In this document: positions 1,329-32,917 of the stretch, piece by piece
Layout of the letters: every line of letters begins with the position of its first letter
Position numbering within the stretch: position 1 is the first letter of the stretch
Source of the DNA: Mustelus asterias
Taxonomy: Eukaryota
DNA length: 64,000 nucleotides
Assembly (NCBI RefSeq): GCF_964213995.1
Contig: NC_135804.1
Span: 33,914,001-33,978,000, forward strand
Direction: 5' to 3'
The notes under the pieces: generated by a model
Seen by the model: only the letters and a program-made list of their open reading frames with translations
Database searches by the model: none
Told to the model about the DNA's origin: nothing
Made by a program: the position numbers and the translations under genes

Positions 1329-1412
1329 CTTAATTCAACCAAGCTGCGATTTGTTTTTATTGCTTGTGCCATGTACTTTGCACCTTCGTCCCCAATCTTG
1401 TTGAACTGTAAG
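1329..1412 (-). CDS. NLR LRR exon (GLQFNKIGDEGAKYMAQAIKTNRSLVEL); gene probably continues beyond the window start
   Basis: 84 nt, phase 2-2, CCTACTTCAG| ... |GTAAGT; RI-type LRR; no convincing terminal exon in 1..1328. Confidence 0.9.
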
Positions 1413-1565
1413 CTGAAGTAGGACAAAGACTTATATTTTAATAACTGGATAAAAGCAAGTTACTGCGGATGGTGGAATCTGAAACCAAAAGAGAAAATGC
1501 TGGAAAATCTCAGCAGGTCTGGCAGCATCTGTAAGGAGAGAAAAGAGTTGACGTTACACTCTACT

Positions 1566-2208
1566 TGAGACTTAGCAGGAGATCATGGCACCTCATTGAA
1601 ATGCATCGGTCTATTGTTAGAAGTCCAGATCGGGCCAGACTTTCTGTCACCAAGAGATCCTGTAGAAACCTTACCTGATAACAAGTTTAACAACATGGAG
1701 ATGGACACCTGGGGGGTGGACCCTGGTGTCCTGTCAGGCAGACATCAAGAAACCCACTGGGTATTGGAACCCCCTCCTGGGACCTCATTGGCCAGAAGCC
1801 AGAGAAGTTTCTGGAAAGGCAAGCAGGCTGGGGATAAAGGGACACACTCAAAGGCACACAGCAGCGAAGACTTGACAGGGGAGACAGCCGTGATCATTCG
1901 GAAGACTGACCAGACAAGGAAGGAAGGAAGAAGCGGCCATCGAGACTCACCTTCGTGACGACAGACCAAGGGGACTCAGAGAATCGGGCCTGCAGTTTAA
2001 CCAAACCATCTTTACGGGTAGTATACTTGAATCTGCTGGGGTATCCTCTGGTTTTATGTGGGTAATTTAAGGGTTAATAGTGTTATTTAATAAACTTGTT
2101 GAATCTTTACTTGTGTTTGTCCTTTGTCCACCTTGCAAATAAGGGCACCGGGGTAAAACCTTGGAGTAAGTAAACTGGTTGAAAGTATCTGAGATTAACA
2201 GGTACAAC
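1566..2208 (+). mobile_element. Possible LTR-like element
   Basis: TG start, ...ACAACA end and internal AATAAA, similar to the layout of the 24931 element; no TSD found. Confidence 0.35.
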
Positions 2209-2581
2209 AGTGGGAACTGCTAGCCTATGGAAAGTTCAAGAATTGTTCCAGCAGTGGTTGTCATTTGCTTTGCAGCATGTTAAATCCATTACAAGGTGGT
2301 GACACAGCACACCTCACAGACCTTTTGTTTGTGAACAAATATGAGACGATTGTGTCTCTAGTTACAGCTGGGTGATATAAGTGTTTATCTTAGGTTTATT
2401 AAAATACAATTAATAAAATGCACAAGTAAAAATGTTAACACTTTAACGAGCATACAGATCCTGCTGATCAATATGAGGAACCACTGTGCAGACGTCAAAG
2501 CAAACAGTGCAACTCCGAGATTCAGTAATATAGCAAAGTACTGCTCAGAATTTGTTTTTATCCATAGGCTAAAGAACATAC

Positions 2582-2665
2582 CCGAAAACTCGCAATGTTG
2601 TATTGATCTCCAGCGCTTTAGCTATTGAATGGGCACCTTTGGTTCTGATAGTATTTGCTCTTAAT
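2582..2665 (-). CDS. NLR LRR exon (GLRANTIRTKGAHSIAKALEINTTLRVF)
   Basis: 84 nt, phase 2-2, TTTTCTCCAG| ... |GTATGT; RI-type LRR. Confidence 0.9.
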
Positions 2666-2929
2666 CTGGAGAAAATAAAGAGATTTATTTTAGGGAAGAG
2701 AACTAAGCATTGCAGTCATCACAACAGCAGTGTAGCAAAATCATTTTTTTCCTGCAAGTTTGATAAGCATTCTAATTTGCCAGATTAAGGAGAGCCTGTG
2801 GCACAGTGGTACTGTCACTGGACTAGTAATCCAGAGACCGAGGTTCGTAATCCCACCACGACAGATAGTGAAATTTGAATTCAATAAAAATTTGGAATTA
2901 AAAGTCTAAGATGAAAACAAGAAAGAGAA

Positions 2930-3540
2930 GCAGGACCAGGCCACCAGGCCCTTCAAGCTCTGCCCTGTCATTCAATATGATCATGGCTGATCTATGCCGG
3001 CCTCAACTCCTTTTCTGTGCCATTTCCCCATAGCCCTCTATTCCTTGATCTATCAAATATTTATTCATCTTCACTTAAAATATTTCTAATGATCCAGCCT
3101 CTACCACCCTTTGGGGCAGAGAATTCTGTTATATCTGCACGAAGAAATTTCTACACACCTCACTTTTAAATGACCAGCCCTTTATCTTGTAGCCATGTCC
3201 CCTTGTTTGAGACTCTCCCACTAGTGAAACCATCTACCCTGTCAAGCCCACTCAGGATCTTGTATGTTTGAATAAGTTCACTCCTCACTCTTCTAAACTC
3301 CAAGGAATACAGACCCAGACTATTTAATCTCTCTTGATAGGACAACCTCCTCATCCCAGGAACTAGCCTGGTGAATCTCCTTTGCTCTGCCTCCAATGCT
3401 ACTATATCTGTTTTTAGATAAGGGAACCAAAACTGTACACCATATTCCAGGTGAGACCTCACCAACACCCTGTACAATTGCAACAAAACCTCCCTATTTT
3501 TAAACTCCAACCCCTTTGCAATAAAGGCCATGAAACCATT
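2930..3540 (-). mobile_element. CR1/HER1-like LINE 3' fragment nested in an older SINE
   Basis: RT C-terminal motifs LYRVLVRSHLEYGVQFW...RRFTRL; SINE halves at about 2790-2910 and 3540-3665. Confidence 0.82.
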
Positions 3541-3694
3541 GTCGTAAAAACCCATCTGGTTTGCAAATGGAAGGAAATCAGCCATTCTTACCTGGTCTGG
3601 CTCTTAACTGTCCTCTGAAATGGCTTAGCAAGCCACTTAATTCAAGGGCAGGGACGGGCAACAAATAGTGCCCTGGCCAATGTAAAATACATAC

Positions 3695-3778
3695 CCCAAT
3701 GTTTTCAGACTGCTGTTTGTTTTCAACGCTTCAGCTATCTGGGCTGCTCCTTTCTCCCTTATGGAGTTGTGCTTCAAC
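3695..3778 (-). CDS. NLR LRR exon (RLKHNSIREKGAAQIAEALKTNSSLKTL)
   Basis: 84 nt, phase 2-2, TCTTCACAG| ... |GTATGT; RI-type LRR; absent from the ORF track. Confidence 0.9.
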
Positions 3779-4619
3779 CTGTGAAGATTCCAGATATTCA
3801 GTCATTGTATCATATGTCTGGCCTTGAAGTTAGAGATAACCAGATATTATGTGCAGACACTCAATCATCTCAATTGTAGTTTCTGATTTAATGATAATTG
3901 GTTTGGAACTATTCCTGATTAGTTATCATTTTTGCATGGCTTATGGGGAATTATTTACTGCAGTAAATAAAATGCAGGTTCTTACAATAGAGACTGAATA
4001 GAAAGTAGCTATTTTCATGTGTTAAACAGAGTTCATTTCATTGCGTGTCATATATATTCCACTGCTTGTCATGAGCACCAGGAATACGATGCTGTTAGAA
4101 AACTGGCTTGGAATAGTTAGCACACCAAAACACACACACGATCGACATCGTAATCATTGAAAATTCTAGAATTTAATTACTACGTTTCTGCTACTCCACA
4201 TATTTAGCATCATTAACTTTTAATGAGCCCCCTTTCCCCATTATGGTATTTGCAGTCAGTATATAAACAAAAAAAGCTAAATTAATTAACAACAGAAAAT
4301 GATATTATTCATCATTTTTTTTTATCAGGTTGATTTTTCAGACAGTCACAGTAAAATACAATTTTCACAATTTTATAAAGTACAAACGTTATGAATCTTC
4401 AAACATCTTTGTATGATATAACAGTTGGAAGAAAGAGCTCATAACAAACTTTATCACTCTTGGGATGAGAATTTTAGCCCTAAAAATATTTTTTCAACCA
4501 AGTTTCAATCTTTTCTCTATATTTTTTGTACTTAACCAAAACTTGTAGTTCATCTTTAATCTTATTGCGATGCCAGTTTAATAATGTGGTGTACAAAAGT
4601 GGAGCAGTTGGAATTTTAC

Positions 4620-4706
4620 CTTAAGATTTCTATTCTACACCTTTCGCTTTTGAGTGCATTTGCAATGATCTCTGCTCCTTCATCCTCCAGCATGTTCCCC
4701 TCTAAA
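4620..4706 (-). CDS. NLR LRR exon (SLEGNMLEDEGAEIIANALKSERCRIEIL)
   Basis: 87 nt, phase 2-2, TTTACAG| ... |GTAAAA; ribonuclease-inhibitor-type LRR consensus. Confidence 0.9.
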
Positions 4707-4836
4707 CTGTAAATTAAAACATATATCTTTTTGTTAGTTCTGCCTTTGTAAATGCCGAATGTATTTTTGAAGTTATTTGCAGAGCTATAATTATTCAATT
4801 TAAGTTGTGCTAGCATATTCTCACATACTAAACAGG

Positions 4837-4968
4837 TGATGTGGAGATGTCGGCATTGGACTGAGGTGGGCACAGTAAGAAGCCTCAAAACACCAGGTTA
4901 AAGTCCAACAGGTTTATTTGGAATCATGAGCTTTCGGAGCGCTGCTCCTTCCTGAAGAAGGAGCGAGA
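4837..4968 (-). mobile_element. Penelope-like pLTR fragment
   Basis: Same GATGTGGAGATG...CACCAGGTTAAAGTCCAACAGGTTTATTTGG sequence as the element at 52656. Confidence 0.6.
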
Positions 4969-7370: not shown

Positions 7371-7537
7371 AATATTTAAGTGCAAAGCATAAGACTCATC
7401 TGTCTGACTGACAGTCTATAGGGGAATAAATATATTTACATCAGTAGATTTATCTTTAAAAGGCACGGTTGCTGATCCACCAAAATTCCAGAGCATTTCT
7501 GTAACTTCTAATTCATGTCTAAAAATAGTTTTAATAC

Positions 7538-9275
7538 CTCAATATCTTGACTCTTGAGAAAATACACTCCAGTCTTTGGAAGCCAGAAGCTCCGGCTTTA
7601 CATCCATCTAATTCCAATGTTTCAATAGTTGGATAGTAAGAAAGAAGGTTTGCGATTGCTGTGCAGTCAGTCACATTCAAAGAAATGTAAGAAAAATTTA
7701 CTACATCACTGGTTTGGGAGGTAACAAGTTGCGTTAAACTTTCATTTGCTGCTTCATAGAGACAATGCGAGGCAGTTAGCTTTTGTCTTTTGTGAACGGT
7801 ATATTTTGTAATATTTTCAGGAGTTATCGTGTCTTCTTTTGGAACTTCGACTGCAGCCACATTCTTGATGGCATCGAGGACTTCCGCTTCTTTCAGTTGA
7901 TGTTGAGGCATCAACTGTTTCACAAGTTTCCTGTTGCTGTGAGAGACCAGGCCAGCAGTGAATCTCAGCACAATCTCAAACACATTGCTCTTTGAACTGA
8001 AGGCTTTATGCACATGATCCATACCGGGCTCATTTGCAGAAACGCAATAGAGTGCGGCAAAAAACTCCTGATGTGTCAGATGGAAAAACTGCCAAATGTG
8101 GGATTGCATCATCTTCAGACTCTCTTTGGTGAGAATTTTCTTCCAGAAGGATTTTTTATCCGGGGGGTTTTGGGCGAGGTTCCTTTCAATGTCTTTTGCT
8201 GAGAATATTATTGTTTTATTGATGATTCCGTCCCACGCAATTTGTGCCAATTTAATGATTTCATTCTTGTCTTTGTCGTCTTCAATGCAGAAGGACTCAG
8301 GGTCTTCTTCCTCACCACTGCCACAGACCAGCAAACACTTGGTGAATCTGAGGAACAAATCCGTGATTGTCCTTGGAAAGGAAGAGATCTGAGACCACTT
8401 GCCTTTACAGTGGAAGGACTTGTGGAGGTAGAAACACAGGATGTCACAGAATGCAGGAACATAGCAAAGTCCAAACAAAGAATCGATGCTCTTCACTGTT
8501 CGAAAGACATAATCAGCAACTTTTTTATCTTTGAGGCACTTCAAAAAGTATGCATCAATTTCCTTTGTGGAAAATCCTAAAATCTCAGCACATCGATTAA
8601 AATATGTTTTGTGATCTAAATCAATAGTGGTTGGGCGAGATGTAATAAGGACAGTTGCCTCAGGAAGTAGGTTTCCCTTTATGATATTTACAATTAAACT
8701 GTTAATATGTTGAGCAATGGACCGGTCGACAACTGAGCGACTGTTAAATTCAAGAGGCAATTTGAATTCATCCAATCCGTCAAATAAAAACAGGATCCTG
8801 CGAGGAAATTCCAGTATCTTATCGCACGACGCTCTCAGATGAGGGTAGCTCTGTACTATAAGTTCAGTCAGGCTAATTTTTTCCTTGATTGTGTTTAACT
8901 CCCGAAAACTGAAATAAAGCAGTACATAAAATCCAGTATAAATCATTCCACAGGCCCAACTGTGAGCAAGCTTCTGCATCGTAACGCTTTTGCCGATGCC
9001 TGCCACTCCTTGCACGAGAGTGACTCGGGGCGGCTTTTCCCCAGGTGCAGATGGCGACAGAAGCTGTTTTATGTCTATCCGCTCACATGCCGTGTAGTCT
9101 CTGTGTTGCAGGAGTTCATGTTCAGTTTTATTCCTTTCTCGCACATTGAGAATGACGAGGCTGGTGAAACGTTCCTGCAGCAATGGTCTGCTGTTATCAA
9201 ATACAAAGTACGGTTTGATTCTCTCCATCTGTGCTTGCAATGTGCATTTATGTGTGGCCACCGCTTCAGAGATTT
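7538..9275 (-). CDS. Ig-NLR gene exon 6: NACHT NTPase, HD1/WH/HD2 and first LRR (NLRC-type NOD-like receptor)
   Basis: Acceptor CTTGTAATTACAG| (phase 1), donor AG|GTATT (phase 2); 1738 nt open. Walker A GVAGIGKS, Walker B ILFLFDGLDEF, sensor-1 VLITSRP, LCYVPAFC, winged-helix FFHLTHQEFFAALY. Confidence 0.95.
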
Positions 9276-10213
9276 CTGTAATTACAAGAGGAAAGTAATG
9301 AGCCACAGTGGAGCCCACATTTTCTACCATCATGAGCAGGGCTCCTCAGTGAATTACACAGCATGACACATACCCCTGTGCCACCAGATTTGGGACGTTA
9401 CACATGTGATAAATTAATACAACAGGCACAAAATGAAAACAAGTACGATCCAAATCACAGAAAACAAATGTAATGTTTCTTTGGTCTATGAGATTGATTT
9501 ATATCAAACCCAGGAGAATGGCGTTTGTGTTCGATGAAATGGGACATCTGTTGTAAGGCTTTGCCCCATGACAATAAAGGCTTATCTGGAAGGCAAATAC
9601 TAAGAACCTGGGCAATGGAGGTTTCACTGTGTATATAAAGGAATATGAGCCATCTGAGAAAGTGCAGTTCATTTTAAGAATTCAAATGTCTCTTGTAAAA
9701 ATACATGAAGGTAACAACAGCAGGCAGATTCAAATTTTAATTTATTCCATTCTACTAAGTAGTAAATATAGCATATTATTAAAATCAGCTGGCAGGAGTA
9801 TTTGACAGCTTGATTGTCCCATAATATTGCCAAGGCACAAAATGCAGTTGCGTGATCACCTGTAAAGTAGCACAACCTCTGGATGCTTCCTGAATGTAGC
9901 AAACATGTAATGTTTTGCATGACTTAAAAATTATTATACTTAGAATAGTATGATTAATTTCACCTCGCACCACAGTTCACATATCATTCATGAAGTTAAA
10001 CCTGCTTTGCCTTCAAGAAAAATAAAAATTCCACTTTGTTCAAATTCCTTGCAAGATTCTGAGAGTGTCAAGGCTTTAAATAAAAATGAAATCTCTGCCT
10101 AATATCTTGGATATAATTATGGGTTCATTTTTAATGCACATTCTGCAAATCTGGTGTAAAACCTATTCTTTAAGGTATATTTTTATTTTTAACAAATGAG
10201 TTAACAATGCTAC

Positions 10214-13576: not shown

Positions 13577-13613
13577 CCATCTGACGAAGGAGCTGTGCTC
13601 CGAAAGCTTATGG
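13577..13613 (+). ncRNA. Minimal hammerhead ribozyme motif (Penelope-like fragment about 13570-13668)
   Basis: CCAT CTGACGA AGGAGCTGTGCTCC GAAA GCTT ATGG, followed by the same pLTR tail as the other copies. Confidence 0.68.
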
Positions 13614-14339
13614 TATTTGCTACCAAATAAACCTGTTGGACTTTAACCTGGTGTTGTGAGACTTCTTAGAGGGACATGACCAGACAGTGCCCTGGCAATG
13701 CCCTCTGGCACTGCCCCTTGACACTGGCTGGCACTGCCAGGTTTGCAAGATGCCACCCTGGCAGTGCTAGCCTGGTGGGTACTAGCTCTGACTTGGGGGA
13801 GGCGGTGGGGGGGGGGGGGGTGGTTTGAAAGAGGCCAATGATCGGGGGGTGGGGGCAGTGATCTGGGAGGGGGGAGTTGTGTCGACTTCGATCAGCGCTG
13901 GGGAGGGGAGCCCCTGATACCTCTGTGGTGGGCTGGGGGTGGGGGGGAGATTTATTCAGGTCATGATCGGGGCACCCTTTAAAGATGGTACTCTGATCTC
14001 TGTGCAACCAGGCTTTGCTGGTGTGTTGAGGCCCCGTCCTCCTGTATGGTGGTGTGATTTTTTTTGGCAGAGTGTCGTAAAATCTGGAGAGAAAACTGAC
14101 CAGTTTCTCTGGAGATAAACATGCCGGTTTTCTCAGCGGAAACAACACTCTACCATTGTTTGGTAAGATTTCACCCAGAGTTTACATTATCTGTATCAGG
14201 GTTTAAACTGTCTTTCCATCCATCAGTATTAAAGAACTTCCAAATCAATAGGTCCAAACTATTAATGATACTGAAATCTTAAACATAGAGATGCCTATTC
14301 ATTACATGGAGGAGATTTTCTTTGACAAATCACATTTAC

Positions 14340-14780
14340 CTTCAGGGAAGTTGGTTATTTGGATTTTTTCACTGATGTCCTCAAATGAAACAGTTGGTAG
14401 GTTTTCATTGAGAAGATCAATAAGTGGTCTGCCATCTTTGTCAATGTAGGATTCCAGCAGTGTTGTTACAAACTTCCTTAAGCCAGGATAAAGATCTTTG
14501 GTGTCCTGCAACACCTCGAGAAACTCCGCACATGATTGCTGACCTTTGTGGTTCATTATGTCGAGAAGGGTTCGCCCTTTATCAACGTCTGGTTTCTCTT
14601 GTATTATGTCATGGTCATCTTCAGAGATTATTCTCTTACACATTAAAAGCTTTAGGAGTGGAAGTATGTTGGGACTGATGTAATTCACCACAGTTCGACG
14701 GCCTTCTTCGATTGCATGGATTGCCCAGTCTGCGCGCTTCATTTGTGGTGGAAAATACTTAGTACTGTCACAAGCTCCTG
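14340..14780 (-). CDS. Ig-NLR gene exon 5: CARD (death-fold) domain
   Basis: NAGNAG acceptor TCATTCTTAG|CAG| (both phase 1), donor GAAG|GTAAAT (phase 1); 441 nt. CARD-like pattern: RRTVVNYIS..ILPLLKLLMCKRIISEDDHDIIQ..DKGRTLLDIMNHKGQQSCAEFLEVLQ..LYPGL. Confidence 0.88.
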
Positions 14781-16911
14781 CTAAGAATGATAAGAAATCA
14801 TTTAAAATCAAAAGTGACTGTCAATCAAACAAAACTGTCTAAAAGATTTGAAATTTTGTAGCTAATAAGATGGTATAAGCAAAAAAATAAATGGCTTAAT
14901 TCAACTGCTGTAGAGTTTTGCAATAGTTGTGTCTGGCAAGTTTATATCATGGTTTGAAATACGAATGATTTTCTCCTTTTTTACAGGTTAAGTAATGCAC
15001 ATTCCAAAACAACTTTTTCCCAGCAATCTTATAAGGGTAGTATTATTGTTGATTTTACCAACTCCTACTTGTCTTTGTTCTAATGAACATTTCACGCACT
15101 GACTGAAGTTACTGCTAAGAGCTAAAATGCTAAATGTTAGTGCAGATCAAAGTAGGAATGTCCGTTCTTTTTGAGTGATACCTCCAATTCTGAGCAATGT
15201 AACGAGTATGGTAACGCCAAAAGTTGGTCATACCCACATTTGTTAGTTTAGGACTTTATACACACGGGTCTGGAATTTTTACTGGGTTCTCCAGGAGAGA
15301 GTAGGTGAAACTCAAGGAAAAATTGTGCTAATCATTAATAAATAGCCACTTCTGCCATATCTCCAAATATCCCACAGCAGGAAAATTGGAGGAACCCTGT
15401 GGAATATCGGCGCCATAACTGGTAGCGGGAGAAGAAATAATATTTTACCCTTTTCTTCTACCATGTTTCTTTCCTCTTCCTTTTTAAAAGACAGTATTGA
15501 CAATGGATTTTTTTATTCATTCGTAGATGGTGGACAGGCTTTGGGGAGTTAGGAGATGAGTTACTCACCACAGTATTCCTAGCCTCTGACCTGCTCTTGT
15601 AGCCATTGTGTTAGTGTGGTGAGTCCAGTTGAATTTTTGGTCAATGGTAACCCTAAGGAGATTGACAGTGGGGGATTCAGTGATGGTAACACCATTGAAT
15701 GTCACGGGTCAGTGGTAAGAGCGTCTCTTCCCGGTGATGGTCACTGCCTGGCATTTGTGTGGCACCAATGTTGTCTGTTGCTCTATTTCTTATGTATGAG
15801 CAGACAGTGTGGTAGTTGAGGCTGATCCTGTCCTATCTGACATTCACACGTGCTGACTTTCAGCAAGGGTTTTAAGACAACTCAGATGCTGAGGTTGAAT
15901 TTGGTACACCCACCCCCACCAGACCATAGATAAACTAATTCTGAAGACAACAGGAATTGAACCTGGAATCCGCTTAGTCAAGAAGTAACCATTTACAGGG
16001 TATATTTTGTTGTTTGGAAAGTTAAAGAGAAAGCTTCCAGAATACCTAGACTATTTGGGTAATATGGTCCCATTGCACTGTAGACATCTAGAATTTCAGG
16101 TGTAAGGCATTCTAAAATTCATGCACAATTCCAGCAGAATTGGCTGCAGACAGAAGACCCTGCCTTTCACAGAGTGCTATATGTTTACTAGTAAAAGGAT
16201 AATAAGAGCAAAAGCCGCTGTCTCAAAAATTCCATCATTTATATCAGAATTACACTTCATTTGCCTCAAAGTGGTAGAAACATGAATTTAGTTGCCTGAT
16301 TAACAATTTCTGTTTGAAACATCGATGTTAAATAAAGAAATCAGAAGAATCTATTGCAGTTGGATAATGTAAAAATGATTGTACAAACTTCTGATCAGCA
16401 CTTTAGGCAGGAAATGTTTCTTTCCCACCCTCCTGTTATGGAGTCTTTATCATGGGGTTCGCGATGCGCGGTCCTGCATAATGGTCTTATTGAGGGGCAG
16501 AAGGGAGCTGGAAGAAGAAGAAATAATGGAGGCTTACAGAATGGCTGCACCATTTAGAGAAGATGACCAACTAGGAGGGATACTTCCAACAGTATTAACA
16601 AACCACTTCACTCTAGGTAGTGCTGCATTCTTGTCAAATCCTGTGAAGTGCTTTGGAAAATGTTACTAAATATGTAGTTGTTCCTGTAGTTATTAAAATA
16701 ATAAGAAGAATTCAAATAAATTTGCTTAATCTGATATACTAACATTGGACACAATAAAGCATAGTCTATGATATACACAACTGTGTACTGTCAAATGATC
16801 TCTCTTTTATTATTTAATCATGCCCCATCATTTTGGCACAGATTAAAACAATTCTAGTTTTCTTTAATTTCTTTTCTGATCTTATCGTGCAGTAGAATAA
16901 CAGCAACTCAC

Positions 16912-17340
16912 CTTTGATTTCTAAAAAAACTACTTTTGAAACTCTTTGTTTTATAGCATTATGCTGAACTTCAAAAGAATACACCAGCTTCTTGTTTGTA
17001 GCTTCTGTAGTTCTGATGGTAAGCTGAGATATTAAGCTGTATGCCCCACTCCCTTGGTGTTCTTTCAAAGTCATGGCAATGTCATGTTCTCCTTCCAGTG
17101 TTTTGTCTTGTTCCTGCTCACTCTGATAATCTTCTATTCTACTGAATTCACGTTGTCTTATAGATGATGAAGTGCTGTTCCATTTACTGACGAGAACTCT
17201 CTGGGATTTACCTTCTTCTTCTCTGTACCAAGAGGCACTGATAGCTTTTGGTTTGAACCAGAGAACCGCACAAACCAGAGAGAGGGGATCATCCATATGG
17301 AGGTGGTTTGATTTAACAATGTCTGTCACTTTGGGAGCAA
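16912..17340 (-). CDS. Ig-NLR gene exon 4: divergent Ig C1-like domain (alternative upstream acceptor at 17442 from a 102-bp duplication)
   Basis: Acceptor TGTTTTTCAG|, donor |GTGAGT; 429 nt (531 nt from the upstream acceptor), phase 1-1. Motifs APKV, LVCAVLWFKPKAISASW, GAYSLISQL, YSFEVQH (second Cys replaced by Phe); long charged insertion. Confidence 0.85.
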
Positions 17341-17468
17341 CTGAAAAACAAAGAGAAACAGAATCAACCGCACAAACCAGAGAGAGGGGATCATCCATAT
17401 GGAGGTGGTTTGATTTAACAATGTCTGTCACTTTGGGAGCAACTGAAAAACAAAGAGAAACAGAATCA
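17264..17468. repeat. Perfect 102-bp tandem duplication spanning the exon 4 splice acceptor
   Basis: Identical units start at 17264 and 17366; 34 codons, frame-preserving. Confidence 0.95.
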
Positions 17469-17644
17469 CCCAGTTACGCATCTTTCAGGACTCAACATTG
17501 AGTTCAACAACTTTAGACTGTGACCTTTCTCCTCCTTCTTATATCTCAAACGTTTTTTGTTCCTTTGTAAAAACCCTCTCTTCCCCGGGTCAATGGTCAC
17601 TTTTTCTTAAGTTTTGCTGCATTGTTCTTGCAATCTCTCCCAGC

Positions 17645-18890: not shown

Positions 18891-21612
18891 CTTACGAAAA
18901 AGTGCAGCTTGTACAGCACAAGGTCAATACCCTGAAATACTCCACCTTACGACAGCCTCACAACCACATAAAATACTGTGCTTCAAGGACACAGACCACC
19001 ACTGTCTTTTCAGGGCAATAAATGAAGCCTTGCCAAAGTCACCAGCATTTCGAAAACAAGCTGACAAAAGAGTGATTATTCACCTTTTCTGTTACTGCTG
19101 TACAAAAGAAGTGTTGCAACGCAAACAGCTGTGGTGATCACAGAAGTTAGGAGAAAAGTGAGCAATATTCTTGATCTTGCCCTGGATCCTGTACAAATGC
19201 AAAACCAGAGAGGCATTATTGATTGTTCACTGCTCTTTCTCTGTGCTTAAAACAAAAGTTTTAAATTTACTTGCAGGGCAGCATCGCGCCTGAATAATTG
19301 AAAGAACCTTTCAATGACAAATGACGCAGTAACTCCTGCTTCATTCACAATGAAGTGAAACGACCAACACATTAGCTGGAAAATCAAGTGGTCTCCATCT
19401 TAAAGAATATTCTTTGACATTTTAAAACAAACCTGTATTTCACTACTTCATAAATGGAATTCTTTCAACTAGAGTGGAAACGTGAAACTTGTGACAGTTC
19501 AGTGTGTGCCATAACCATTTAGATTGTGAGGTCAAGATGAAAATAATTATTTATTGATCCAATATTCTACCCAGTCCCACTCTGCACCCAGGATATGCTA
19601 CACCTGACACTCCAGGCCCTCATTTAGATTGTAGTACTTTTTTCCTTTTCTACCTTAAGGACCTTAAGGCAAGATATTAAAAATGGGATATGGTGATAAA
19701 AATAAAAGTCAGATGTTGACAAGTAGCACTACAACATGAGAATATATTATAAAAGAACAGCTTTGGGAACATTTTTAAAACCTTACATTTATACGCTTAC
19801 ACCTAGGCATACAACAGATCGGCTTCCTATGGCTTGTGTGTAAGATCCAAGACCAAACCCTGTAACGGTCAAAGAGGCACCAAAGAGAAATGCTCCAGCT
19901 TACACCGATTTGTCATTGAAAACCATGGAGGATAAGTCACTATAATGCTGACATTCTTCTTTGATAAAGTCACTCAAATACACACAAAGCAATTGGGACC
20001 TGGGACAATTAGAAGACCAAGGTGTGTGGCATGACACAAGCCACTCTAAGTAGGTTCTTCCACCAAGCTGGAGGCTGAAGTCTGTCTAATAGCTTCTGAT
20101 AAAACTGGGACTTGTGATGACTAATGCTGGAAGATGTGAAATGGAAGCAATGCTCTATGTTTCCAAGGCTCAGTACCCAAGATGATTGGCTTGCCAAGAG
20201 TTACTCTCAAGTTATATAATCATATATAGTGTGACATATGATGTGTGCCAATGTTGTGGTCAGGAAGATAATGGCAATGTACTTGTACGTTTTAATGTCC
20301 GTTCTAATGCTTACTTCACCATTTTGAGCAGCACTTGCTCTTGCTAAGCACTGGGCACAACCTGTATTTTTTAATTGTTTATTGGCAAAATAACGACAGT
20401 CTCCTTCAGGCGGAGGAAGTAATCAGATCCCTTTGGGATCAAGGGGGTTCCACAATGATACAAGTGATGGTAGAAATTCAGAACTAATGAGTGAAATGGA
20501 TTCCAAGCACCGAGAGAAATGACTCCTCATCTAGCCTGGCTCACTAATTGATCCTAGATGGCGTAGACTTGTCACTGGAGGCTGGAAATGTTCCCACTGG
20601 TTTGTAGAATTATCTGGAGTCAATGGCCAGAATTTTACCACCTCGCCCTCTACAAGAATTGGAACGGGCGAGAGGCGGACAATAGGAAAGTCTGTTGCAC
20701 CTCGGGCTGGATTTTACGGTTTCGGGACGAACAAGGTCGTAAACTCCCGCCCATTGAGTGTGCTTTAACTGCAAGGCACTTCTATGTACACTTGGGGGTA
20801 ACAAAACCCTGGCTCCGTTGACCTAAACTTTCTGGACTTAGGGGGATGAGTTGTGCTCCAAAGGGGAATGTGTGTGAGTTCTGTATTGAAATTCTATCTG
20901 TCGTTTCACTCAGATATTCTCAAACATGTTCACAAATCTTTGAGTCTGCTGATAGCTGAACAATCAAAAAATAGATTATTTGGTTGAATACTCACTCAGG
21001 CTAATTAAAAAAGAACTTTTTGTTCCTAATAGTAAAATAATTGTTCCCTTGCAAATTTTGACATGGGGTACAACAGAATCCACTTAGAAATTCCATATCA
21101 TTCAGATATAATATTGAAATTGCTTTGTTGTCTTTTCATTTCTAATAAATTCATATGAAAGTTCATCAGTATTTCTATCCCTGTGTGTTGTGAAAAACAT
21201 TCACAAATACATTTCAATGAACAGATGAGCAATGAACAATTTGAACAATGAAGAAAAACTGGGCCTAAATGTAAATATGGCAAGGCTCATTGGAAAGAAT
21301 AGGGGATTTTAAGGCCTCACTCGTCCCAAAACCGTAAAATCCCACTCGAGGTCAACGGACCTTTCCATTGTCTGCCCCCTCGCTCCAATTCCCGTGGCGG
21401 GTGGGATGGTAAAATTCCGGCCTAGATGTCTACATGTGCAGGAACCAAATAATGTCCTTAATTTGTAATGATCCATTTGTGTGGCTCAGTTACACAAATT
21501 CAAGCCAAGGTTTCCTAAGTGAAAGTAAATTCCAATTCATACCACATTAGATTCGAAAAATGAAATATTTCTCGCCATTTACTAGATACCATTCTCCTTT
21601 ATTATTACTCAC

Positions 21613-21942
21613 CCTTGATGGTCAAACTAACAACTCTTTGTAAAGGTGTCTCTAAAGCTTCATGACTAATTTTGCAGACATAAGATGCTCCATCATCTGC
21701 CTGGGTGCCTTTGACAATCAGGAATGAAAGCTGATTAAACGTTCCATCTTGATTTTGCTGAGGTTTTCCCGCAATCGCTCTTGATGTGAGGTCAACTTGG
21801 TTTTCGCTGTCCTTTGAGCCACGTTTAAACCAAGAGATAGAGTGGTTTTCTGGATAAAAATGTTTCATCTCACAAATGATTGTTTTATCTTCCCCAAGTT
21901 CAACGTCTATGTTTACGGTGTTTACTGAAACCGTAGGAGGTA
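21613..21942 (-). CDS. Ig-NLR gene exon 3: Ig C1-set domain
   Basis: Acceptor TTTTTTTCTTGGTAG|, donor |GTGAGT; 330 nt, phase 1-1. C1 motifs: PPTVSV, ICEMKHFYPENHSISW, QNQDGTF, YVCKISHEAL. Confidence 0.92.
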
Positions 21943-22397
21943 CTACCAAGAAAAAAAGGAATTAAAATAAATTTTATGTTCCTTTTATTAGATATCTCCT
22001 TAAAAATGCAACATGGTCATGTTAGCCATGCATAGAAATGGGTGCAGGCAATTTAACCCCTCAAGCCTGTTTTGCCATTGAATGTGCTTATGGTTGATCT
22101 GAGACCTTATTTCATGTACCCACCTGAGCCCCATATGCATTAATACTTATGGCCAACAAAAATTAGGTTATAATAAAAAAAAATGCTGGATAAATGAAGT
22201 AGGCTGGCAAAGTAACATGGACTCGAAATGTTAACTCTGTTTCTCTCGCCACATCCAGCATTTTCTTTATGTATTTCAGAATTCCAACATCCACAGTATT
22301 TTTTTTTTAAATATAAAAATTAGGCTATCTCAGGTTTAAATTTACAATTGATCTTGCGTTAATTACTTTCTTCAAAAGAGATTTCCAAACCTATTTT

Positions 22398-25737: not shown

Positions 25738-26161
25738 CCCCTGACACGATGAGCTCTTATTCCGTGTAGCAACCTTTGACGTGGCACCTTGTCAAATGCC
25801 TCTCAAATCACAGAATCAATCCAGATGGATGTTTCAATGTGCAGAAATGTACCTTCACAACTAAGATAAAAGTTTAAGTTAATTTAACCTGATTGTGGAA
25901 GTGCTTTTCTCTCAGAAATTTCTAGACACTTTTATTTTAGCTCATTTAGGTGAAGGCAAATGATTTGCCTTTTTACGGTAAACTCGGAGTTCAATTGAGA
26001 ATATTTGCATCTCTGCACTTTTCTCATCAGTACATTTTTACACTTCCCAAAGTCAGCTGGAATTCTTAATTTACATTCACATTTCCGGTGAATATAGTGA
26101 ATAAAAACTCCACACACACAGTTCCTGAAGGATCATACTTCAGGCATTATTCCTCACTCAC

Positions 26162-26500
26162 CTGTTATTGCCAGAGTAACGGTCCCCGTTGCTTTATCAG
26201 AAAATACTGTAACTGTGCAGGAGTATGATCCAACATCTTGAATTGTAACATTTTTTAGAAGTAAAGAAGCATTTGCTTTGCTTATTTCATTTATGGAGAG
26301 ACTCGATCCTGGTCTATAGCTTTCATATTCTCCAAACTCGAACAAGCAAACTGCTTTGTTATCGGTGCCCACTCTGTGATTCCATTCAATCACAATGTAG
26401 CTCAATTTCAATTCAACTGTGCGTGTAAATAGGCAGCCCAGCACGACATCATCACCGATTGTGGCATTGATAGCTGGGATGACCATCACCTCGAGGGAAG
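26162..26500 (-). CDS. Ig-NLR gene exon 2: Ig V-set domain (B7/NCR3LG1/tapasin-like)
   Basis: Acceptor TTTTTTAATGCAG|, donor |GTGAGT; 339 nt, phase 1-1. V-set motifs: GDDVVLGC, IEW, ANASLLLKNVTIQDVGSYSCTV. N-glycosylation sequons NAT, NAS, NVT. Confidence 0.92.
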
Positions 26501-27029
26501 CTGCATTAAAAAATACACAACAAAAGTTCAAAACATGGTTCATAAATAATTCATTACAATCATTCTTTGCTTCACGAAAATTCTGTGGAAGGAGAAATGG
26601 CGAACAGAGGCAAAATATAACAGGGGCGTGTGGGACACCACTCAGCCACTTTTAAATATCTATTTCCTTCATTACAACAGTAGCGGCTATTCTTTAAAAA
26701 AGTACTTCATTGGCTGGAAAGCATTTTAATATATCCATTGGTCGTGAAAATGCAATTTAAATGCAAGTCTATCTTTTTGTTTCCCAGCCTGCAGCCAGCA
26801 ACCAGAGAGGTGTGTGTGGTGGGAAGGGAAAGATATGGGGGAGCAGGAGGAATGACCCACGACTGGGAGGGGAGAGGTTGGTGATTGTGGGGTGGGGGGG
26901 AATAGATCTGTGATTGGGTGGGGAGGGGGAAAAAAACTTTGTTTATGAAAGGCGATGGAGGATCCTGATCAGGTTGTGGGGATAAAAAGCCATTGGTTGG
27001 GATGGCTGGGATCAGAATATCAGGACCTA

Positions 27030-30700: not shown

Positions 30701-31645
30701 TATGCGTATGTGCAGTTGCCCCAAACAGTCAGCCTTCAGTTTATTGGTCAGCTCGATCGCTGGCCAGCCTGGGACACTCGCACTGCTGCCCCACAGTTCT
30801 CACCAGCATTCCCGGGCCAGCCCCAACACCCCCCACCCCACTCCGGCCAGAGCACCCCAATCTCCGGCACCCCCCTATCAGTGACAATCCCACCCCAATT
30901 ACTGCCCTCCTTCCAGCCTTGACCGGATCCCAATGCAGAATGGCAGCGGGACCCCCCCATTCCCACCAATTGCCCCGAGTCCCTGCCCCCTCAGCCCCAC
31001 CACCTTGGCACTGTCCCTTGCCCAATGGGCAGTACCAAGGCACCCCCTGGACATGGGCACTTTGCCCCTTGGGCAAATGGTATGATGGCCTTTGTTGAAA
31101 GAGGATTTGAGTATAGGGATAGGGATGTTTTGCTGCTATTGTACAAGGCCTTGGTGAGGCCACATCTGGAATATTGCGGCAATTTTGATGTCCTTATCTG
31201 AGGAAGGATGTTCCTGCTATAGAGGGAGTACAGCGAAGGTTTACCAGGCTAATTCCTGGGATGGCAGGTCTGTCATATATGAGGAAAGACAAAGTCATAG
31301 AGTCATAGAAGTTTACAGCGTGCATTTAGGATTATATTCAAAGAACAAAGAAAATTACAGCTCAGGAACAGGCTCTTCAGCCCTCCTAGCCGAATTCATT
31401 GGACTTTAGAAGAGTGAGGGGGGATCTCATAGAAAGTTATAAAATTCTAACAGGGTTAGACGGGTAGATTCAGAAAGAATGTTCCTGATGGTGGGGGAGT
31501 CCAGAACTAGGGGTCATCGTTTGAGGCTAAGGGATAAACCTTTTAGAATTGAGGTGAGGAGAAATTTCTTCATCCAGAGAGTGGTGAATGAGTGGAATTC
31601 ACTGCACAGAAAGTAGTTGAGGTCAAAATGTTGTGTGATTTCAAC

Positions 31646-31975
31646 GGCACGGCACGGTAGCACAGTGGTTAGCACTGCTGCTTCACAGCTCCAGGGACCT
31701 GGGTTCGATTCCCGGCTTGGGTCACTGTCTGTGTGGAGTTTGCACATTCTCCTCGTGTCTGCGTGGGTTTCCTCCGGGTGCTCCGGTTTCCTCCCACAGT
31801 CCAAAGATGTGCGGGTTAGGTTCATTGGCCATGCTACAAATTGCGCTTAGTGTCCTGAGATGCGTAGGTTGGAGGGATTAGTGGGGAGATATGGGGGTAG
31901 GGCCTGGGTGGGATTGTGGTCGGTGCAGACTCGATGGGCCGAATGGCCTCTTTCTGTACTGTAGGGTTTCTATGA
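31646..31975 (+). mobile_element. HE1-like SINE
   Basis: Near-identical to the copy at 11334. Confidence 0.88.
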
Positions 31976-32249
31976 TATAGCTCTTGGGGCTAAAGGGAAC
32001 AACTCCTAGCAGTGCTTGATTCATAACATAGAACACAACTACTTTATAATATCATGGGACATCCAGAAAGCATAACCATGTTTCAATGTTTCTTTGATTG
32101 TCCTTGAATCTTCCCACCACACTTGCCATCCTCTCGCGCCGCACCCTTTGGGAACCACTGGAATATAATGATCAGCCATGGTCGTAATGAATGGTGGAGC
32201 AGGCTTGAAGGACTGAATAGACTACTCCTGCTTCTAGTTTCTATGACAA

Positions 32250-32590
32250 ATCATAGAAATCATAGAAACCCTACAGTGCAGAAGGAGGCCATTCGGCCCA
32301 TCGAGTCTGCACCGACCACAATCCCACCAGGCCCTACCCCCACATATTTACCTGCTAATCCCTCTAACCTACACATCCCAGGACTCTAAGGGGCAATTTT
32401 TAACCTGGCCAATCAACCTAACCCGCACATCTTTGGACTGTGGGAGGAAACCGGAGCACCCGGAGGAAACCCACGCAGACACGAGGAGAATGTGCAAACT
32501 CCACACAGACAGTGACCCGAGCCGGGAATCGAACCCGGGACCCTGGAGCTGTGAAGCAGCAGTGCTAACCACTGTGCTACCGTGCCGCCC
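32250..32590 (-). mobile_element. HE1-like SINE
   Basis: Reverse complement of the copy at 11334. Confidence 0.88.
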
Positions 32591-32865
32591 TGTATGTACA
32601 CGTCACAGTCATTTATTGTTTTCCATCTTCTGATGGTAGTTCAGCTGAAAAAAAACCTGTTAAATCTTCAGGAAAGCAATTGTTTTGGCAATACTGTAAT
32701 ATACCAAGTATTAGGGTTTATTGTATTATTAATAATAACTTTAACCAGAATAATTAACTATCGTTCCACTTTCTGTCGATTGAATCCCTGGCATGAAGGC
32801 TGAATTTAACTCGTCCAGAGGGAATTGACTTCCTTGTTCATAGTCACAAAGGCTTCTTCACTTAC

Positions 32866-32917
32866 CTGCTACGGAAACAAAGCAAAACGTTGTGAATTTT
32901 GTTAGAAAGCAGCTCAT
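32866..32917 (-). CDS. Ig-NLR gene exon 1: putative leader/signal peptide exon (MSCFLTKFTTFCFVSVA+G)
   Basis: ATG at 32917 (ACA-ATG context); 17 codons + 1 nt, then a strong donor CAG|GTAAGT. Phase 1 matches the IgV acceptor, giving ...VSVA-ASLEV.... Moderately hydrophobic; ISRE-like motif about 93 bp upstream. Confidence 0.72.

What the first reader, a model, noticed from the sequence alone, without database searches (positions are those of the whole stretch)
1329..32917. Candidate immunoglobulin-NLR chimeric gene: leader-IgV-IgC1-IgC1-CARD-NACHT-LRR in one frame
Seen in sequence: ten minus-strand exons with canonical GT-AG sites join without a frameshift or stop (phase 1 five times, then phase 2 for the LRR exons), giving at least 1222 aa. 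The key junction is the third Ig exon donor (16912, phase 1) to the CARD exon acceptor (14780, phase 1) across a 2.1-kb intron. In that gap I see no separate TM/cytoplasmic exon for the Ig gene and no separate first exon for the NLR. Established: V+C1 Ig modules typify B7/NCR3LG1/tapasin-type molecules of jawed-vertebrate immunity, while NLRs normally begin with CARD, PYD, BIR or FISNA. Inference: exon shuffling through phase-1 introns placed an Ig module at the N-terminus of an intact CARD-NLR, like an integrated sensor domain. I do not know this architecture from the literature, but I cannot search.
Basis: partly seen in the sequence, partly recalled or inferred. Interest (0 to 1): 0.95.

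Follow-up and report, generated by a model that had tools for sequence, protein, structure and literature searches.

The report
Shark membrane-anchored NLR with B7-H6-like ectodomain

Summary
Contigs of two public runs, from two organisms and two studies, contain the key Ig3-to-CARD junction (16912 to 14780). A DNA-like run lacks it.

It is phase 1 at both ends and encodes a transmembrane helix between the IgC1 exon and the third Ig exon. The architecture is therefore leader, IgV, IgC1, TM, Ig-like domain, CARD, NACHT, LRR.

The window matches RefSeq LOC144492602 of Mustelus asterias at 98-100% in the exon-confined alignments. Models with the same architecture exist in 12 shark and ray species, named NLRC3-like or NOD1-like. 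The NACHT tree follows the expected species order.

The V and C1 domains are B7-H6-like. The third Ig domain has Phe in place of the second disulfide cysteine in 12 of 12 species, which fits a cytosolic location. The NACHT is NLRP3-like with intact Walker motifs.

Eight paper searches found no description. The closest published case is the sea cucumber membrane NLR AjNLRC4.

In passing: bichir and reedfish have an unrelated, expanded family of butyrophilin-like Ig-NLR models.

Function is inferred, not shown.

The parts
32866..32917 (-). Coding part of the leader exon (ATG at 32917, 17 codons plus 1 base, donor G|gtaagt, phase 1). The 5' end of the exon was not determined.
   Evidence: Sequence read. 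Phase and borders. tblastn of P0161 residues 1-18. Hydrophobic 10-mer with KD 1.89. Hydrophobic N-termini in 3 of the 4 shark-family proteins scanned (not Narcine isoform X4); all 12 are aligned.
26162..26500 (-). IgV exon (339 nt, phase 1 to 1), B7-like V domain
   Evidence: Pfam V-set 1.4e-7. Best PDB matches are CD276 at 1.1e-11 and NCR3LG1 at 1.7e-9. Borders. Cys/Trp/Cys and two N-x-S/T sequons are invariant in 12 of 12 orthologues.
21613..21942 (-). IgC1 exon (330 nt, phase 1 to 1)
   Evidence: Pfam C1-set 2.4e-12. PDB match to NCR3LG1 (B7-H6) at 4.3e-14, among Ig constant domains. Borders.
19084..19188 (-).
   Evidence: ORF and sequence. Borders. Best 19-mer KD 2.18. 100% match to P0161 residues 241-275. 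Present and hydrophobic in 12 of 12 orthologues (KD 2.18-2.63 in the four scanned). The exon ends in 'ag', as the contig pieces reaching 17342 require.
16912..17340 (-). Third Ig exon (429 nt, phase 1 to 1): a C1-derived Ig-like domain without the second cysteine and with an acidic disordered loop. An alternative acceptor at 17442 adds 34 aa.
   Evidence: Pfam C1-set 3.3e-5. AlphaFold2 model with 8 strands, pLDDT 66 and pTM 0.63. Foldseek hits to Ig constant domains, IgNAR C1 and B7-H6 (6yjp_C, TMq 0.59). Phe at the second-Cys position in 12 of 12. RNA contigs cover 16912-17342.
17264..17468 (.). Perfect 102-bp tandem duplication (2.0 copies) that copies the Ig3 acceptor and the first part of the exon
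   Evidence: TRF. RefSeq isoforms X1 and X2 read through it as one block 17443..16910. The insertion is absent from the 11 other species. The laid contigs use the downstream acceptor.
14340..14780 (-). CARD exon (441 nt, phase 1 to 1), with a NAGNAG alternative acceptor at 14777
   Evidence: Pfam CARD 1.3e-10. PDB matches to ICEBERG, CARD11 and NOD1 CARDs at 3e-5 to 1e-3. Borders. Joint to 16912 in runs X4 and X1. Isoform pairs differ by 1 aa.
7538..9275 (-). NACHT exon (1738 nt, phase 1 to 2): weak FISNA-like stretch, NACHT, helical domain HD2 and the first LRR-like part
   Evidence: Pfam NACHT 1.2e-35, NLRC4_HD2 1.1e-11 and FISNA 0.032, the last below its cut-off. Best PDB match NLRP3 at 1.6e-43, NOD2 at 3.6e-32. 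Walker A GVAGIGKS invariant; Walker B DGLDE core invariant within LFLFDGLDEF (LFLLDGLDEF in 3 rays) in 12 of 12.
4620..4706 (-). LRR exon 1 (87 nt, phase 2 to 2)
   Evidence: Sequence; tblastn.
3695..3778 (-). LRR exon 2 (84 nt, phase 2)
   Evidence: tblastn at 100% to P0161.
2582..2665 (-). LRR exon 3 (84 nt, phase 2)
   Evidence: tblastn at 100% to P0161.
1329..1412 (-). LRR exon 4 (84 nt, phase 2). The last two coding exons lie beyond the window start.
   Evidence: P0161 residues 1292-1346 are unmatched in the window. The LRR-motif scan of 1-1327 printed no candidate.
33010..33024 (+). ISRE/IRF-like triple GAAA element, 93-107 nt upstream of the start codon; a possible promoter element, not tested
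   Evidence: It is the only match in 64 kb, against 0.04 expected; 4 of 100 shuffles had a match. The motif consensus is recalled.

Best explanation
The region holds one gene, RefSeq LOC144492602 of Mustelus asterias, with one-to-one orthologues in sharks and rays. It encodes a single-pass type I membrane NLR. Outside the cell are a leader peptide and a B7-H6-like IgV plus IgC1 ectodomain. A 35-residue TM exon follows. In the cytosol come a C1-derived Ig-like domain that lost its disulfide, a CARD, an NLRP3-type NACHT ATPase with intact Walker A and B motifs, and six ribonuclease-inhibitor-type LRRs.

Shown: the exons, their phases, the used Ig3-to-CARD splice, and conservation of the whole architecture.

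Inferred: the topology, and the way it works. My committed reading is outside-in signalling. Engagement of the ectodomain, by an NKp30-like receptor on another cell or by a microbial surface, clusters the receptor. The membrane-tethered NACHT modules then oligomerise and the CARDs form a platform that recruits a CARD partner (a caspase-1, ASC or RIPK2 type protein). This would resemble a death receptor built on an NLR engine. The cytosolic LRRs keep the engine autoinhibited and may add a second, intracellular input.

Origin: exon shuffling through phase-1 introns in the elasmobranch stem lineage placed L-V-C1-TM plus an extra C1 exon in front of a CARD-first NLR.
For: Exon anatomy and phases come, and domains. 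RNA: the joint 16912/14780 has GT..AG ends in 2 of 4 runs and is absent from the DNA-like run. The intron has zero depth over 15949-16911. One 3508-nt contig runs from 892 nt upstream of its aligned Ig3 piece (to 17342) to the end of the NACHT exon. The exon before Ig3 ends in 'ag', as the TM exon does; the IgC1 exon ends 'gg'. The window matches P0161 at 98-100% in the exon-confined alignments. Of 17 hits, 14 belong to this gene family, from 12 species. All 14 carry V-set, C1-set and NACHT, and 12 of the 14 carry CARD. In alignment A1 the following hold in 12 of 12: V-domain Cys/Trp/Cys, two sequons, a hydrophobic TM, Ig3 first Cys kept with the second replaced by Phe, the YFP linker before the CARD, and the Walker A and B motifs. 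The Ig3 model is an Ig fold. The NACHT tree puts the 12 orthologues in one clade (SH-aLRT 100) whose branching follows what I recall of ray and shark phylogeny (quick tree). The ectodomain's nearest non-NLR relatives are turtle NCR3LG1 and human B7-H6 and B7-H3 structures. A precedent for outside-in signalling by an Ig-TM-NACHT protein is sea cucumber AjNLRC4 (PMC8699970, abstract and passages read).
Against: The laid stretch did not include the TM exon. The 'ag' before Ig3 fits the V exon as well, and RefSeq isoform X5 (1168 aa) joins V directly to Ig3 and so lacks C1 and TM. I therefore cannot prove that the two contigs carry the TM exon. All runs were contigs, not raw reads, and the RNA nature of X1 and X4 is inferred from intron loss and exon-only coverage. 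In X4 the CARD exon contig has depth 150.6 against 80.3 for Ig3. This is unexplained, although the tool warns against ranking by depth. The N-terminal flank of the TM segment carries more basic residues (4) than the C-terminal flank (2), and the leader has no basic n-region. RefSeq models in different species may lean on each other. There are no protein, localisation, ligand or partner data, and the direction of signalling is a guess. CARD-less isoforms are predicted in Narcine and Pristiophorus.
Confidence: 0.6

Rival explanations
1. Same protein and topology, but inside-out signalling. The cytosolic LRR-NACHT senses a danger or pathogen signal, oligomerises, and thereby clusters or exposes the B7-H6-like ectodomain. 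This flags the cell to NKp30-bearing cytotoxic lymphocytes, giving an 'induced-self' ligand hard-wired to its sensor.
For: LRRs and NACHT motifs are fully retained and are the most conserved parts: NACHT 76-90% and most LRR exons 75-100% identity to other species, against V 63-79%, C1 61-82% and Ig3 43-76%. The ectodomain resembles B7-H6, which in mammals is a ligand, not a receptor. NKp30 is listed among elasmobranch MHC-linked genes in PMC10751288 (passages read).
Against: No data on ligand or partner. A CARD has no obvious role in a pure display mechanism. The only studied Ig-TM-NACHT protein signals outside-in (PMC8699970).
Confidence: 0.2
2. One reading: leader-V-(C1)-Ig3-CARD-NACHT-LRR, as in RefSeq isoform X5. 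The Ig domains and the NLR would then share one compartment, either all in the secretory lumen or all cytosolic if the leader fails.
For: Isoform X5 (P0169) joins V to Ig3. The V exon ends in 'ag', so the contigs are compatible with this form. All the exons involved are symmetric phase 1.
Against: The TM exon is kept, hydrophobic and has invariant residues in 12 of 12 species. Four of 5 M. asterias isoforms, and a full-length model in each of the 12 species, include it. A TM-less product would put an ATPase sensor in the ER lumen or disulfide- and sequon-bearing Ig domains in the cytosol. If the contigs were V-to-Ig3, they would need a 5' UTR of about 500-560 nt, against 68-126 nt with the TM form (arithmetic).
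Confidence: 0.06
3. These are two neighbouring genes, a B7-H6-like gene and a CARD-NLR, whose transcripts are joined by read-through splicing. The fused reading frame would be a by-product without a function of its own.
For: An in-frame Met lies 8 residues before the CARD. Low-depth contigs cover 14753-15122 just upstream of the CARD exon. The CARD exon depth exceeds the Ig3 depth in X4.
Against: That Met is kept in only 8 of 12 species, while the linker residues in front of it (YFP) are invariant, so the linker is coding sequence. The intron after the CARD exon has a similar low depth (13.8 against 9.76), so the coverage looks like pre-mRNA. Depth is zero right after the Ig3 donor, so no Ig-only terminated transcript is seen. 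No Ig-less isoform of this gene appears among the 14 family clusters (lengths limited to 642-2044 aa). The fusion frame is kept in 12 species, and the orthologue tree follows the expected species order.
Confidence: 0.05

Closest known systems
AjNLRC4 of the sea cucumber Apostichopus japonicus (PMC8699970, abstract and passages read; PMC13133943, listing and start of abstract only)
   Same: Extracellular Ig domains, membrane anchoring and an intracellular NACHT. Shown experimentally to be a membrane receptor that oligomerises after ligand binding.
   Different: The paper reports two TM segments, no CARD and no LRR, and signalling to actin and phagocytosis. It is an echinoderm protein, so an independent invention is presumed; sequence relatedness was not tested here. 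The shark protein has one TM, an extra cytosolic Ig-like domain, a CARD and LRRs.
B7-H6 / NCR3LG1 and the B7 family (CD276)
   Same: Leader, IgV, IgC1-type domain and TM exons separated by phase-1 introns. These are the best sequence matches for the V and C1 exons.
   Different: B7 proteins have short cytoplasmic tails. Here the tail is about 1040 residues of Ig-like-CARD-NACHT-LRR. Identity to turtle NCR3LG1 is only 24-27%. Binding to NKp30 was not tested.
NLRP3 and the FISNA-NACHT NLRs of fishes and sharks
   Same: The NACHT exon is closest to NLRP3 structures (1.6e-43). The nearest database relatives that I looked up are named NLRP3-like. There is a weak FISNA-like stretch. The LRRs are of the RI type.
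   Different: CARD instead of PYD, at most 36% identity to any non-orthologue, a long separate stem branch, and a membrane anchor.
NOD1 / NLRC3 (the names NCBI gives these models)
   Same: CARD plus NACHT plus LRR composition.
   Different: The CARD is internal, not N-terminal. Among solved structures the NACHT is nearer NLRP3 than NOD2, and the database relatives I looked up are named NLRP3-like; no NOD1 or NLRC3 sequence was compared. I treat the names as automatic labels, not orthology.
Butyrophilin-like Ig-NLR models of bichir and reedfish (RefSeq predictions; no paper found)
   Same: V-set plus Ig-C followed by an NLRP3-like NACHT (18 of 42 clusters). A TM-like stretch was checked in P0108 only.
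   Different: BTN-type C2-set_3 domain instead of C1. No extra cytosolic Ig. A different N-terminal effector region. A multigene expansion. The NACHT is 28% identical and sits in a separate clade nested among Ig-less polypterid and sturgeon NLRs, so this is an independent fusion.
Teleost NLR-C / NLR-B30.2 (PMC4852459, listing and start of abstract only) and plant NLRs with integrated domains (recalled)
   Same: NLRs that gained a recognition domain by gene fusion.
   Different: In those the added domains are cytosolic and, in teleosts, C-terminal. Neither puts part of the protein outside the cell.

Membership tests
NLR (NACHT-LRR) family | NACHT NTPase domain with Walker A and Walker B motifs | tested here: met
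   Pfam NACHT 1.2e-35. GVAGIGKS is invariant and the Walker B core DGLDE is invariant, within LFLFDGLDEF (LFLLDGLDEF in 3 rays), in 12 of 12.
NLR (NACHT-LRR) family | C-terminal leucine-rich repeats of the ribonuclease-inhibitor type | tested here: met
   Four LRR exons of 84-87 nt in the window. LRR_6 at 5e-13 in orthologue P0002. Pfam gave no LRR hit on the single window ORF tried.
NLR (NACHT-LRR) family | Soluble cytosolic protein without leader or TM segment | tested here: not met
   Leader exon and TM exon are present and conserved. The prediction rests on hydropathy only; no SignalP or TMHMM was available.
NLRC subfamily / orthologue of NOD1 or NLRC3 (NCBI names) | CARD at the N-terminus | tested here: not met
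   A CARD is present but starts at about residue 420 of the 1312-aa isoform.
NLRC subfamily / orthologue of NOD1 or NLRC3 (NCBI names) | NACHT groups with NOD1 or NLRC3 rather than other NLRs | tested here: inconclusive
   PDB ranking is NLRP3 above NLRP1 above NOD2. The named neighbours are NLRP3-like. No bona fide NOD1 or NLRC3 sequences were in the tree.
B7 family / NCR3LG1 (B7-H6) | Leader, IgV, IgC and TM encoded by separate phase-1 exons | tested here: met
B7 family / NCR3LG1 (B7-H6) | C1-type constant domain, the feature that sets B7-H6 apart within B7 (recalled from Flajnik et al. 2012, not seen) | tested here: met
   Pfam C1-set 2.4e-12 beats C2-set_2 at 8.6e-4. NCR3LG1 is among the top PDB hits.
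B7 family / NCR3LG1 (B7-H6) | Binds NKp30 | not testable with these tools
   Needs a binding assay.
AjNLRC4-type membrane NLR | Extracellular Ig, TM, intracellular NACHT | tested here: met
   Predicted from the exon order and hydropathy. The family is defined from PMC8699970.
AjNLRC4-type membrane NLR | Two TM segments, no CARD, no LRR | tested here: not met
   One strongly hydrophobic TM-like segment after the leader (KD at least 2.18); a brief 19-mer just over the 1.6 threshold also occurs inside the NACHT region in 2 of 4 proteins. CARD and LRR are present.
Conjoined (read-through) transcript of two genes | Each parent gene also makes its own complete transcript | tested here: inconclusive
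   No coverage past the Ig3 donor and no exon-like coverage in the intron before the CARD. However, only contigs of two runs were seen, and contigs drop rare forms.

The most novel reading that the evidence does not exclude
Sharks and rays have kept, since their common ancestor, a transmembrane NLR: a B7-H6-like surface module wired through one membrane pass to a CARD-NACHT-LRR engine. It would be the first vertebrate NLR with an extracellular domain. Together with the independent, expanded butyrophilin-like Ig-NLR family of bichirs, it would show that early jawed vertebrates repeatedly fused B7/BTN surface recognition to inflammasome-type machinery. That would link cell-cell (NK-type) recognition directly to NLR signalling.
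Probability: 0.55. Interest if true: 0.88.

Novelty: new variant of a known kind. Interest (0 to 1): 0.78.

Why it matters
NLRs are textbook cytosolic sensors, and B7 and butyrophilin proteins are textbook surface ligands. A protein that is both, conserved in 12 elasmobranch species, would blur the line between surface and cytosolic innate receptors in vertebrates. It offers a natural experiment on how NACHT oligomerisation can be driven from, or reported to, the cell surface. It also raises the possibility that the NKp30/B7-H6 axis was once coupled to CARD signalling. More practically, these models are filed as 'NLRC3-like', 'NOD1-like' or 'uncharacterized', so surveys that count NACHT domains only would miss the architecture. 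The whale shark NLR survey (PMC8455134, passages read) does not use the term 'domain architecture'.

Tried and rejected
A TM or first exon inside the 2.1-kb Ig3/CARD intron. One search lists 45 small ORFs there, none convincing. RNA depth is zero over 15161-15357 and 15949-16911, and the rest is high-copy repeat. Rejected.

Depth in bin 16737-16933 equals exactly the share contributed by the last 22 exon bases in both X4 and X1, so no read-through is seen. Contigs can drop rare forms.

An NLR-only isoform starting at the Met before the CARD. The Met is kept in 8 of 12 species and the upstream linker is conserved. Judged unlikely.

Ranking isoforms by contig depth (CARD 150.6 against Ig3 80.3 in X4). 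Not used, because the tool warns against it. Left as unexplained.

Telling TM-to-Ig3 from V-to-Ig3 in the laid contigs. The two shared letters fit both. Contig-length arithmetic favours the TM form only weakly. With the TM form the X4 contig would begin near 33043, about 20 nt downstream of a 'gataaa' at 33066-33061, but contig ends are not transcript starts.

Sequence search of Ig3 against PDB. Only weak antibody hits (2.8e-4 or weaker). The fold was settled by the model instead.

POP4 or other neighbours. Not checked. ORFs in 33-64 kb are LINE reverse-transcriptase fragments or unassigned.

Holocephalan or bony-fish orthologues. None among the hits, but needs shared 5-mers and a length of 642-2044 aa, so absence is not shown.

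Literature. Searches found no paper on a vertebrate Ig-TM-NLR. The supplements of PMC8455134, which list whale shark NLRs, could bear on this.

The search of earlier findings returned only the two notes on this window.

Full report
OBSERVATION. Pfam was run exon by exon. It gives V-set (26154-26543, 1.4e-7), C1-set (21605-21949, 2.4e-12), a weaker C1-set covering the N-terminal half only (16814-17431, 3.3e-5), CARD (14302-14811, 1.3e-10) and NACHT plus NLRC4_HD2 (7531-9333, 1.2e-35 and 1.1e-11). The LRR ORF at 4616-4888 matched no LRR family.

I read the borders and checked them by script, one exon at a time:
- leader coding part 32917..32866
- IgV 26500..26162
- IgC1 21942..21613
- third Ig exon 17340..16912
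- CARD 14780..14340
- NACHT 9275..7538
- LRR exons 4706..4620, 3778..3695, 2665..2582 and 1412..1329

Every acceptor is AG and every donor is GT. No exon has a stop codon in frame.

THE KEY JUNCTION IS USED. The look-up of sequencing runs gave five runs, and I laid four of them on window 12600-18500. A joint from 14780 to 16912, skipping 2131 nt with ends CT..AC (GT..AG on the gene's strand), is present in X4 (organism B, depth 80.3) and in X1 (organism A, another study, depth 28.5). It is absent from X2, which covers the whole stretch at an even depth of about 25 and so behaves as genomic DNA, and from X5.

X4 and X1 have no depth over 15949-16911 and over 15161-15357. They therefore behave as RNA, although their records do not say so.

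In X1 one 3508-nt contig maps at positions 893-1323 to 17342..16912 and at positions 1324-1764 to 14780..14340. Another 1744 nt follow, against a NACHT exon of 1738 nt. All four runs are contigs, so they show presence but not level, start or end.

THE MISSED EXON. A HMMER search of 1.84 billion representative proteins with the NACHT exon found one close relative, P0002 (77% identity, 1168 aa). In it the exon aligns to residues 426-999. All the other 149 listed hits are at most 36% identical.

P0002 is XP_069757801.1, 'NLRC3-like isoform X4' of the electric ray Narcine bancroftii. It has V-set and C1-set domains. A hydrophobic stretch then lies between the C1 domain and the third Ig domain.

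The same exon is in the window at 19188..19084. It is 105 nt, phase 1 at both ends, with acceptor tgtacag| and donor |gtgaat. Its best 19-residue window has a mean Kyte-Doolittle value of 2.18.

The contig pieces reach 17342 with no mismatch in X4. The exon upstream of Ig3 must therefore end in 'ag'. The TM exon does; the IgC1 exon ends in 'gg'.

The V exon also ends in 'ag'. RefSeq isoform X5 of this gene joins V directly to Ig3. The two letters alone therefore cannot prove that the contigs hold the TM exon. With the TM form, the upstream parts of the contigs (894 and 952 nt once the two shared letters are counted) leave 68 and 126 nt of 5' UTR. With the V-to-Ig3 form they would need about 500-560 nt.

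WHOSE GENE IT IS. The search for homologous proteins with P0002 returned 17 proteins at E of 1e-10 or better. Fourteen of them are this gene family, in 12 species:
- rays: Narcine, Pristis, Mobula, Hemitrygon
- sharks: Pristiophorus, Carcharodon, Heterodontus, Scyliorhinus, Chiloscyllium, Mustelus, Heptranchias, Rhincodon

All 14 carry precomputed V-set, C1-set and NACHT domains. Twelve also carry CARD. The two without it, Narcine X4 and Pristiophorus X2, skip the CARD exon.

tblastn of these proteins against the window shows that P0161, 'uncharacterized protein LOC144492602 isoform X2' of Mustelus asterias, matches at 98-100% in the alignments confined to exons. The alignments that run past exon borders into introns score lower (87-94%). 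The window is therefore that genome or a near-identical one.

Residues 1292-1346 of P0161 have no match, so the last two exons lie beyond the window start.

The five M. asterias isoforms differ in three ways:
- an upstream Ig3 acceptor created by a perfect 102-bp tandem duplication at 17264-17468, which adds 34 aa; this insertion is absent from the other 11 species
- a NAGNAG choice at 14780/14777
- in X5, skipping of the C1 and TM exons

The laid contigs use 17340 and 14780.

CONSERVATION AND TOPOLOGY. I aligned 12 orthologues (A1; mean column identity 81%). The following are the same in 12 of 12:
- the V-domain Cys, Trp and Cys
- two N-x-S/T sequons in the V domain (a third is kept in 7 of 12)
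- the C1 second Cys and Trp (the first Cys in 11 of 12; Narcine has Ser)
- a hydrophobic TM segment with several fixed residues
- in the third Ig domain, the first Cys, with Phe at the position of the second Cys
- the YFP motif in the linker before the CARD
- Walker A GVAGIGKS and the Walker B core DGLDE, within LFLFDGLDEF (LFLLDGLDEF in three rays)

The Met that could start an NLR-only protein is kept in only 8 of 12.

An AlphaFold2 model of the third Ig exon with this alignment has pLDDT 66 and pTM 0.63. It has eight strands and a disordered acidic loop at residues 58-82. Foldseek matches it to Ig constant domains, IgNAR C1 and B7-H6 (6yjp_C, TMq 0.59, the highest in the list).

An Ig domain that lost its disulfide in every species, sitting after a TM segment, fits the cytosolic side. 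Cysteines and sequons kept in V and C1 fit the outside.

Caveats: the basic residues are more numerous on the N-terminal flank of the TM segment, the leader lacks a basic n-region, and I had no signal-peptide or TM predictor beyond hydropathy.

WHAT THE MODULES ARE. The V exon is closest to CD276 (1.1e-11) and NCR3LG1/B7-H6 (1.7e-9) among solved structures. The C1 exon is closest to B7-H6 (4.3e-14), among Ig constant domains. The only non-NLR proteins are turtle NCR3LG1 (24-27% identity).

The NACHT exon is closest to NLRP3 (1.6e-43), then NLRP1 and NOD2 (3.6e-32). The nearest database relatives that I looked up are called NLRP3-like. The CARD is weakly similar to ICEBERG, CARD11, NOD1 and RIPK2 CARDs. 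It is also weakly similar to the N-terminal CARDs of NLRs from lungfish, tarpon and lamprey.

A quick maximum-likelihood tree of NACHT stretches used 63 of the 232 stored proteins that had one; the careful search did not finish. It puts the 12 orthologues in one clade (SH-aLRT 100) on a long stem. Rays split from sharks, and the order within sharks is as I recall the species phylogeny. That is the pattern of a single-copy gene inherited from the common ancestor of sharks and rays.

HOW IT LIKELY WORKS. Shown: one transcript, one frame, a conserved architecture. Inferred: a type I membrane protein with the NLR engine held under the membrane.

I commit to outside-in signalling. Ectodomain engagement clusters the receptor, the NACHT oligomerises, and the CARDs recruit a CARD partner. 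The reasons are that this is how single-pass Ig receptors generally work, and that the one studied Ig-TM-NACHT protein, AjNLRC4 of a sea cucumber, works that way (PMC8699970, abstract and passages read).

The inside-out alternative has a cytosolic sensor clustering a B7-H6-like flag for NKp30-bearing killer cells. It is attractive because the LRRs are retained and the ectodomain looks like a ligand. I cannot exclude it.

Read-through of two genes, and a TM-less main product, are less likely for the reasons given under the rivals.

COMPARISON AND NOVELTY. NCBI already predicts these proteins, under names such as NLRC3-like or NOD1-like. Eight full-text searches found no description of a vertebrate NLR with an Ig ectodomain or a TM segment. 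Look-ups in the most likely papers also found none:
- PMC8455134, the whale shark NLR repertoire (passages read)
- PMC10751288, the shark MHC (passages read)
- PMC11508797 and bioRxiv 10.64898/2026.04.26.720791 (term counts only; all five terms searched in each, including immunoglobulin, transmembrane and shark, had zero occurrences)

I file the gene as a new variant of a known kind. It is an NLR, and Ig-TM-NACHT has an invertebrate precedent. But this combination (B7-H6-like V-C1, one TM, a cytosolic Ig-like domain, CARD, NLRP3-type NACHT, LRR) and its conservation in vertebrates appear undescribed.

IN PASSING. One of the 150 NACHT hits, P0108 (bichir, 'NLRP3-like'), has a V-set domain, a butyrophilin-type Ig-C domain, a TM-like stretch (KD 2.41) and a NACHT. 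It and P0002 are the only 2 of the 150 with an Ig ectodomain.

A search with its N-terminal 440 residues listed 42 proteins. Eighteen of them, all from Polypterus or Erpetoichthys, combine an Ig Pfam domain with NACHT. In the tree, the six that were included form their own clade (support 100), nested among Ig-less polypterid and sturgeon NLRs. This is therefore a second, independent and expanded Ig-NLR family. I found no paper on it.

Noticed in passing
P0108 and P0200-P0219 (stored proteins; not in the window): Bichir and reedfish RefSeq/UniRef models combine butyrophilin-like V-set and Ig-C domains with an NLRP3-like NACHT (18 of 42 clusters). A TM-like stretch was checked in P0108 only. Their NACHTs form a separate clade from the shark gene. 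This is an independent, expanded Ig-NLR family, and no paper was found on it.
   Followed up: partly
window 17264-17468: A perfect 102-bp tandem duplication (2.0 copies, 100% identical) duplicates the Ig3 acceptor and exon start. RefSeq isoforms X1 and X2 use the upstream copy and gain 34 aa. The laid contigs use the downstream acceptor, and the insertion is absent from the other 11 species.
   Followed up: yes
window 33010-33024 (+): A triple GAAA element (ISRE/IRF-like; consensus recalled) lies 93-107 nt upstream of the start codon. It is the only match in 64 kb against 0.04 expected. It hints at interferon or IRF control of the gene.
   Followed up: partly
window 14777-14782: The CARD exon has a NAGNAG acceptor (ttag|cag|). 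RefSeq isoform pairs differ by one residue, and the laid contigs use 14780.
   Followed up: yes
window 14340-14782 against 16912-17342: In run X4 the CARD exon contig has about twice the depth of the Ig3 contig (150.6 against 80.3). This could mean that isoforms skipping Ig3 exist; the TM exon also ends in 'ag', so a TM-to-CARD join would fit the contig break. It could equally mean nothing, since the tool warns against reading depth.
   Followed up: no
P0169 (M. asterias isoform X5); window 26162 joined to 17340: A predicted isoform joins the V exon directly to Ig3 and so skips the C1 and TM exons. It keeps the leader but has no membrane anchor. CARD-skipping isoforms are predicted in Narcine and Pristiophorus. 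All the skipped exons are symmetric phase 1.
   Followed up: partly
window 13388-13781, 15358-15948, 17328-18115; 33000-64000: Very high summed contig depth marks high-copy repeats inside the introns. ORFs with reverse-transcriptase domains (46291-46911 +, 59065-59760 -) and several related unassigned ORFs fill the upstream 30 kb. No other gene was recognised there.
   Followed up: partly
P0151/P0002 (Narcine), alignment A1 columns about 175-180: The Narcine C1 domain has Ser in place of the first disulfide cysteine, which is kept in the other 11 species.
   Followed up: no
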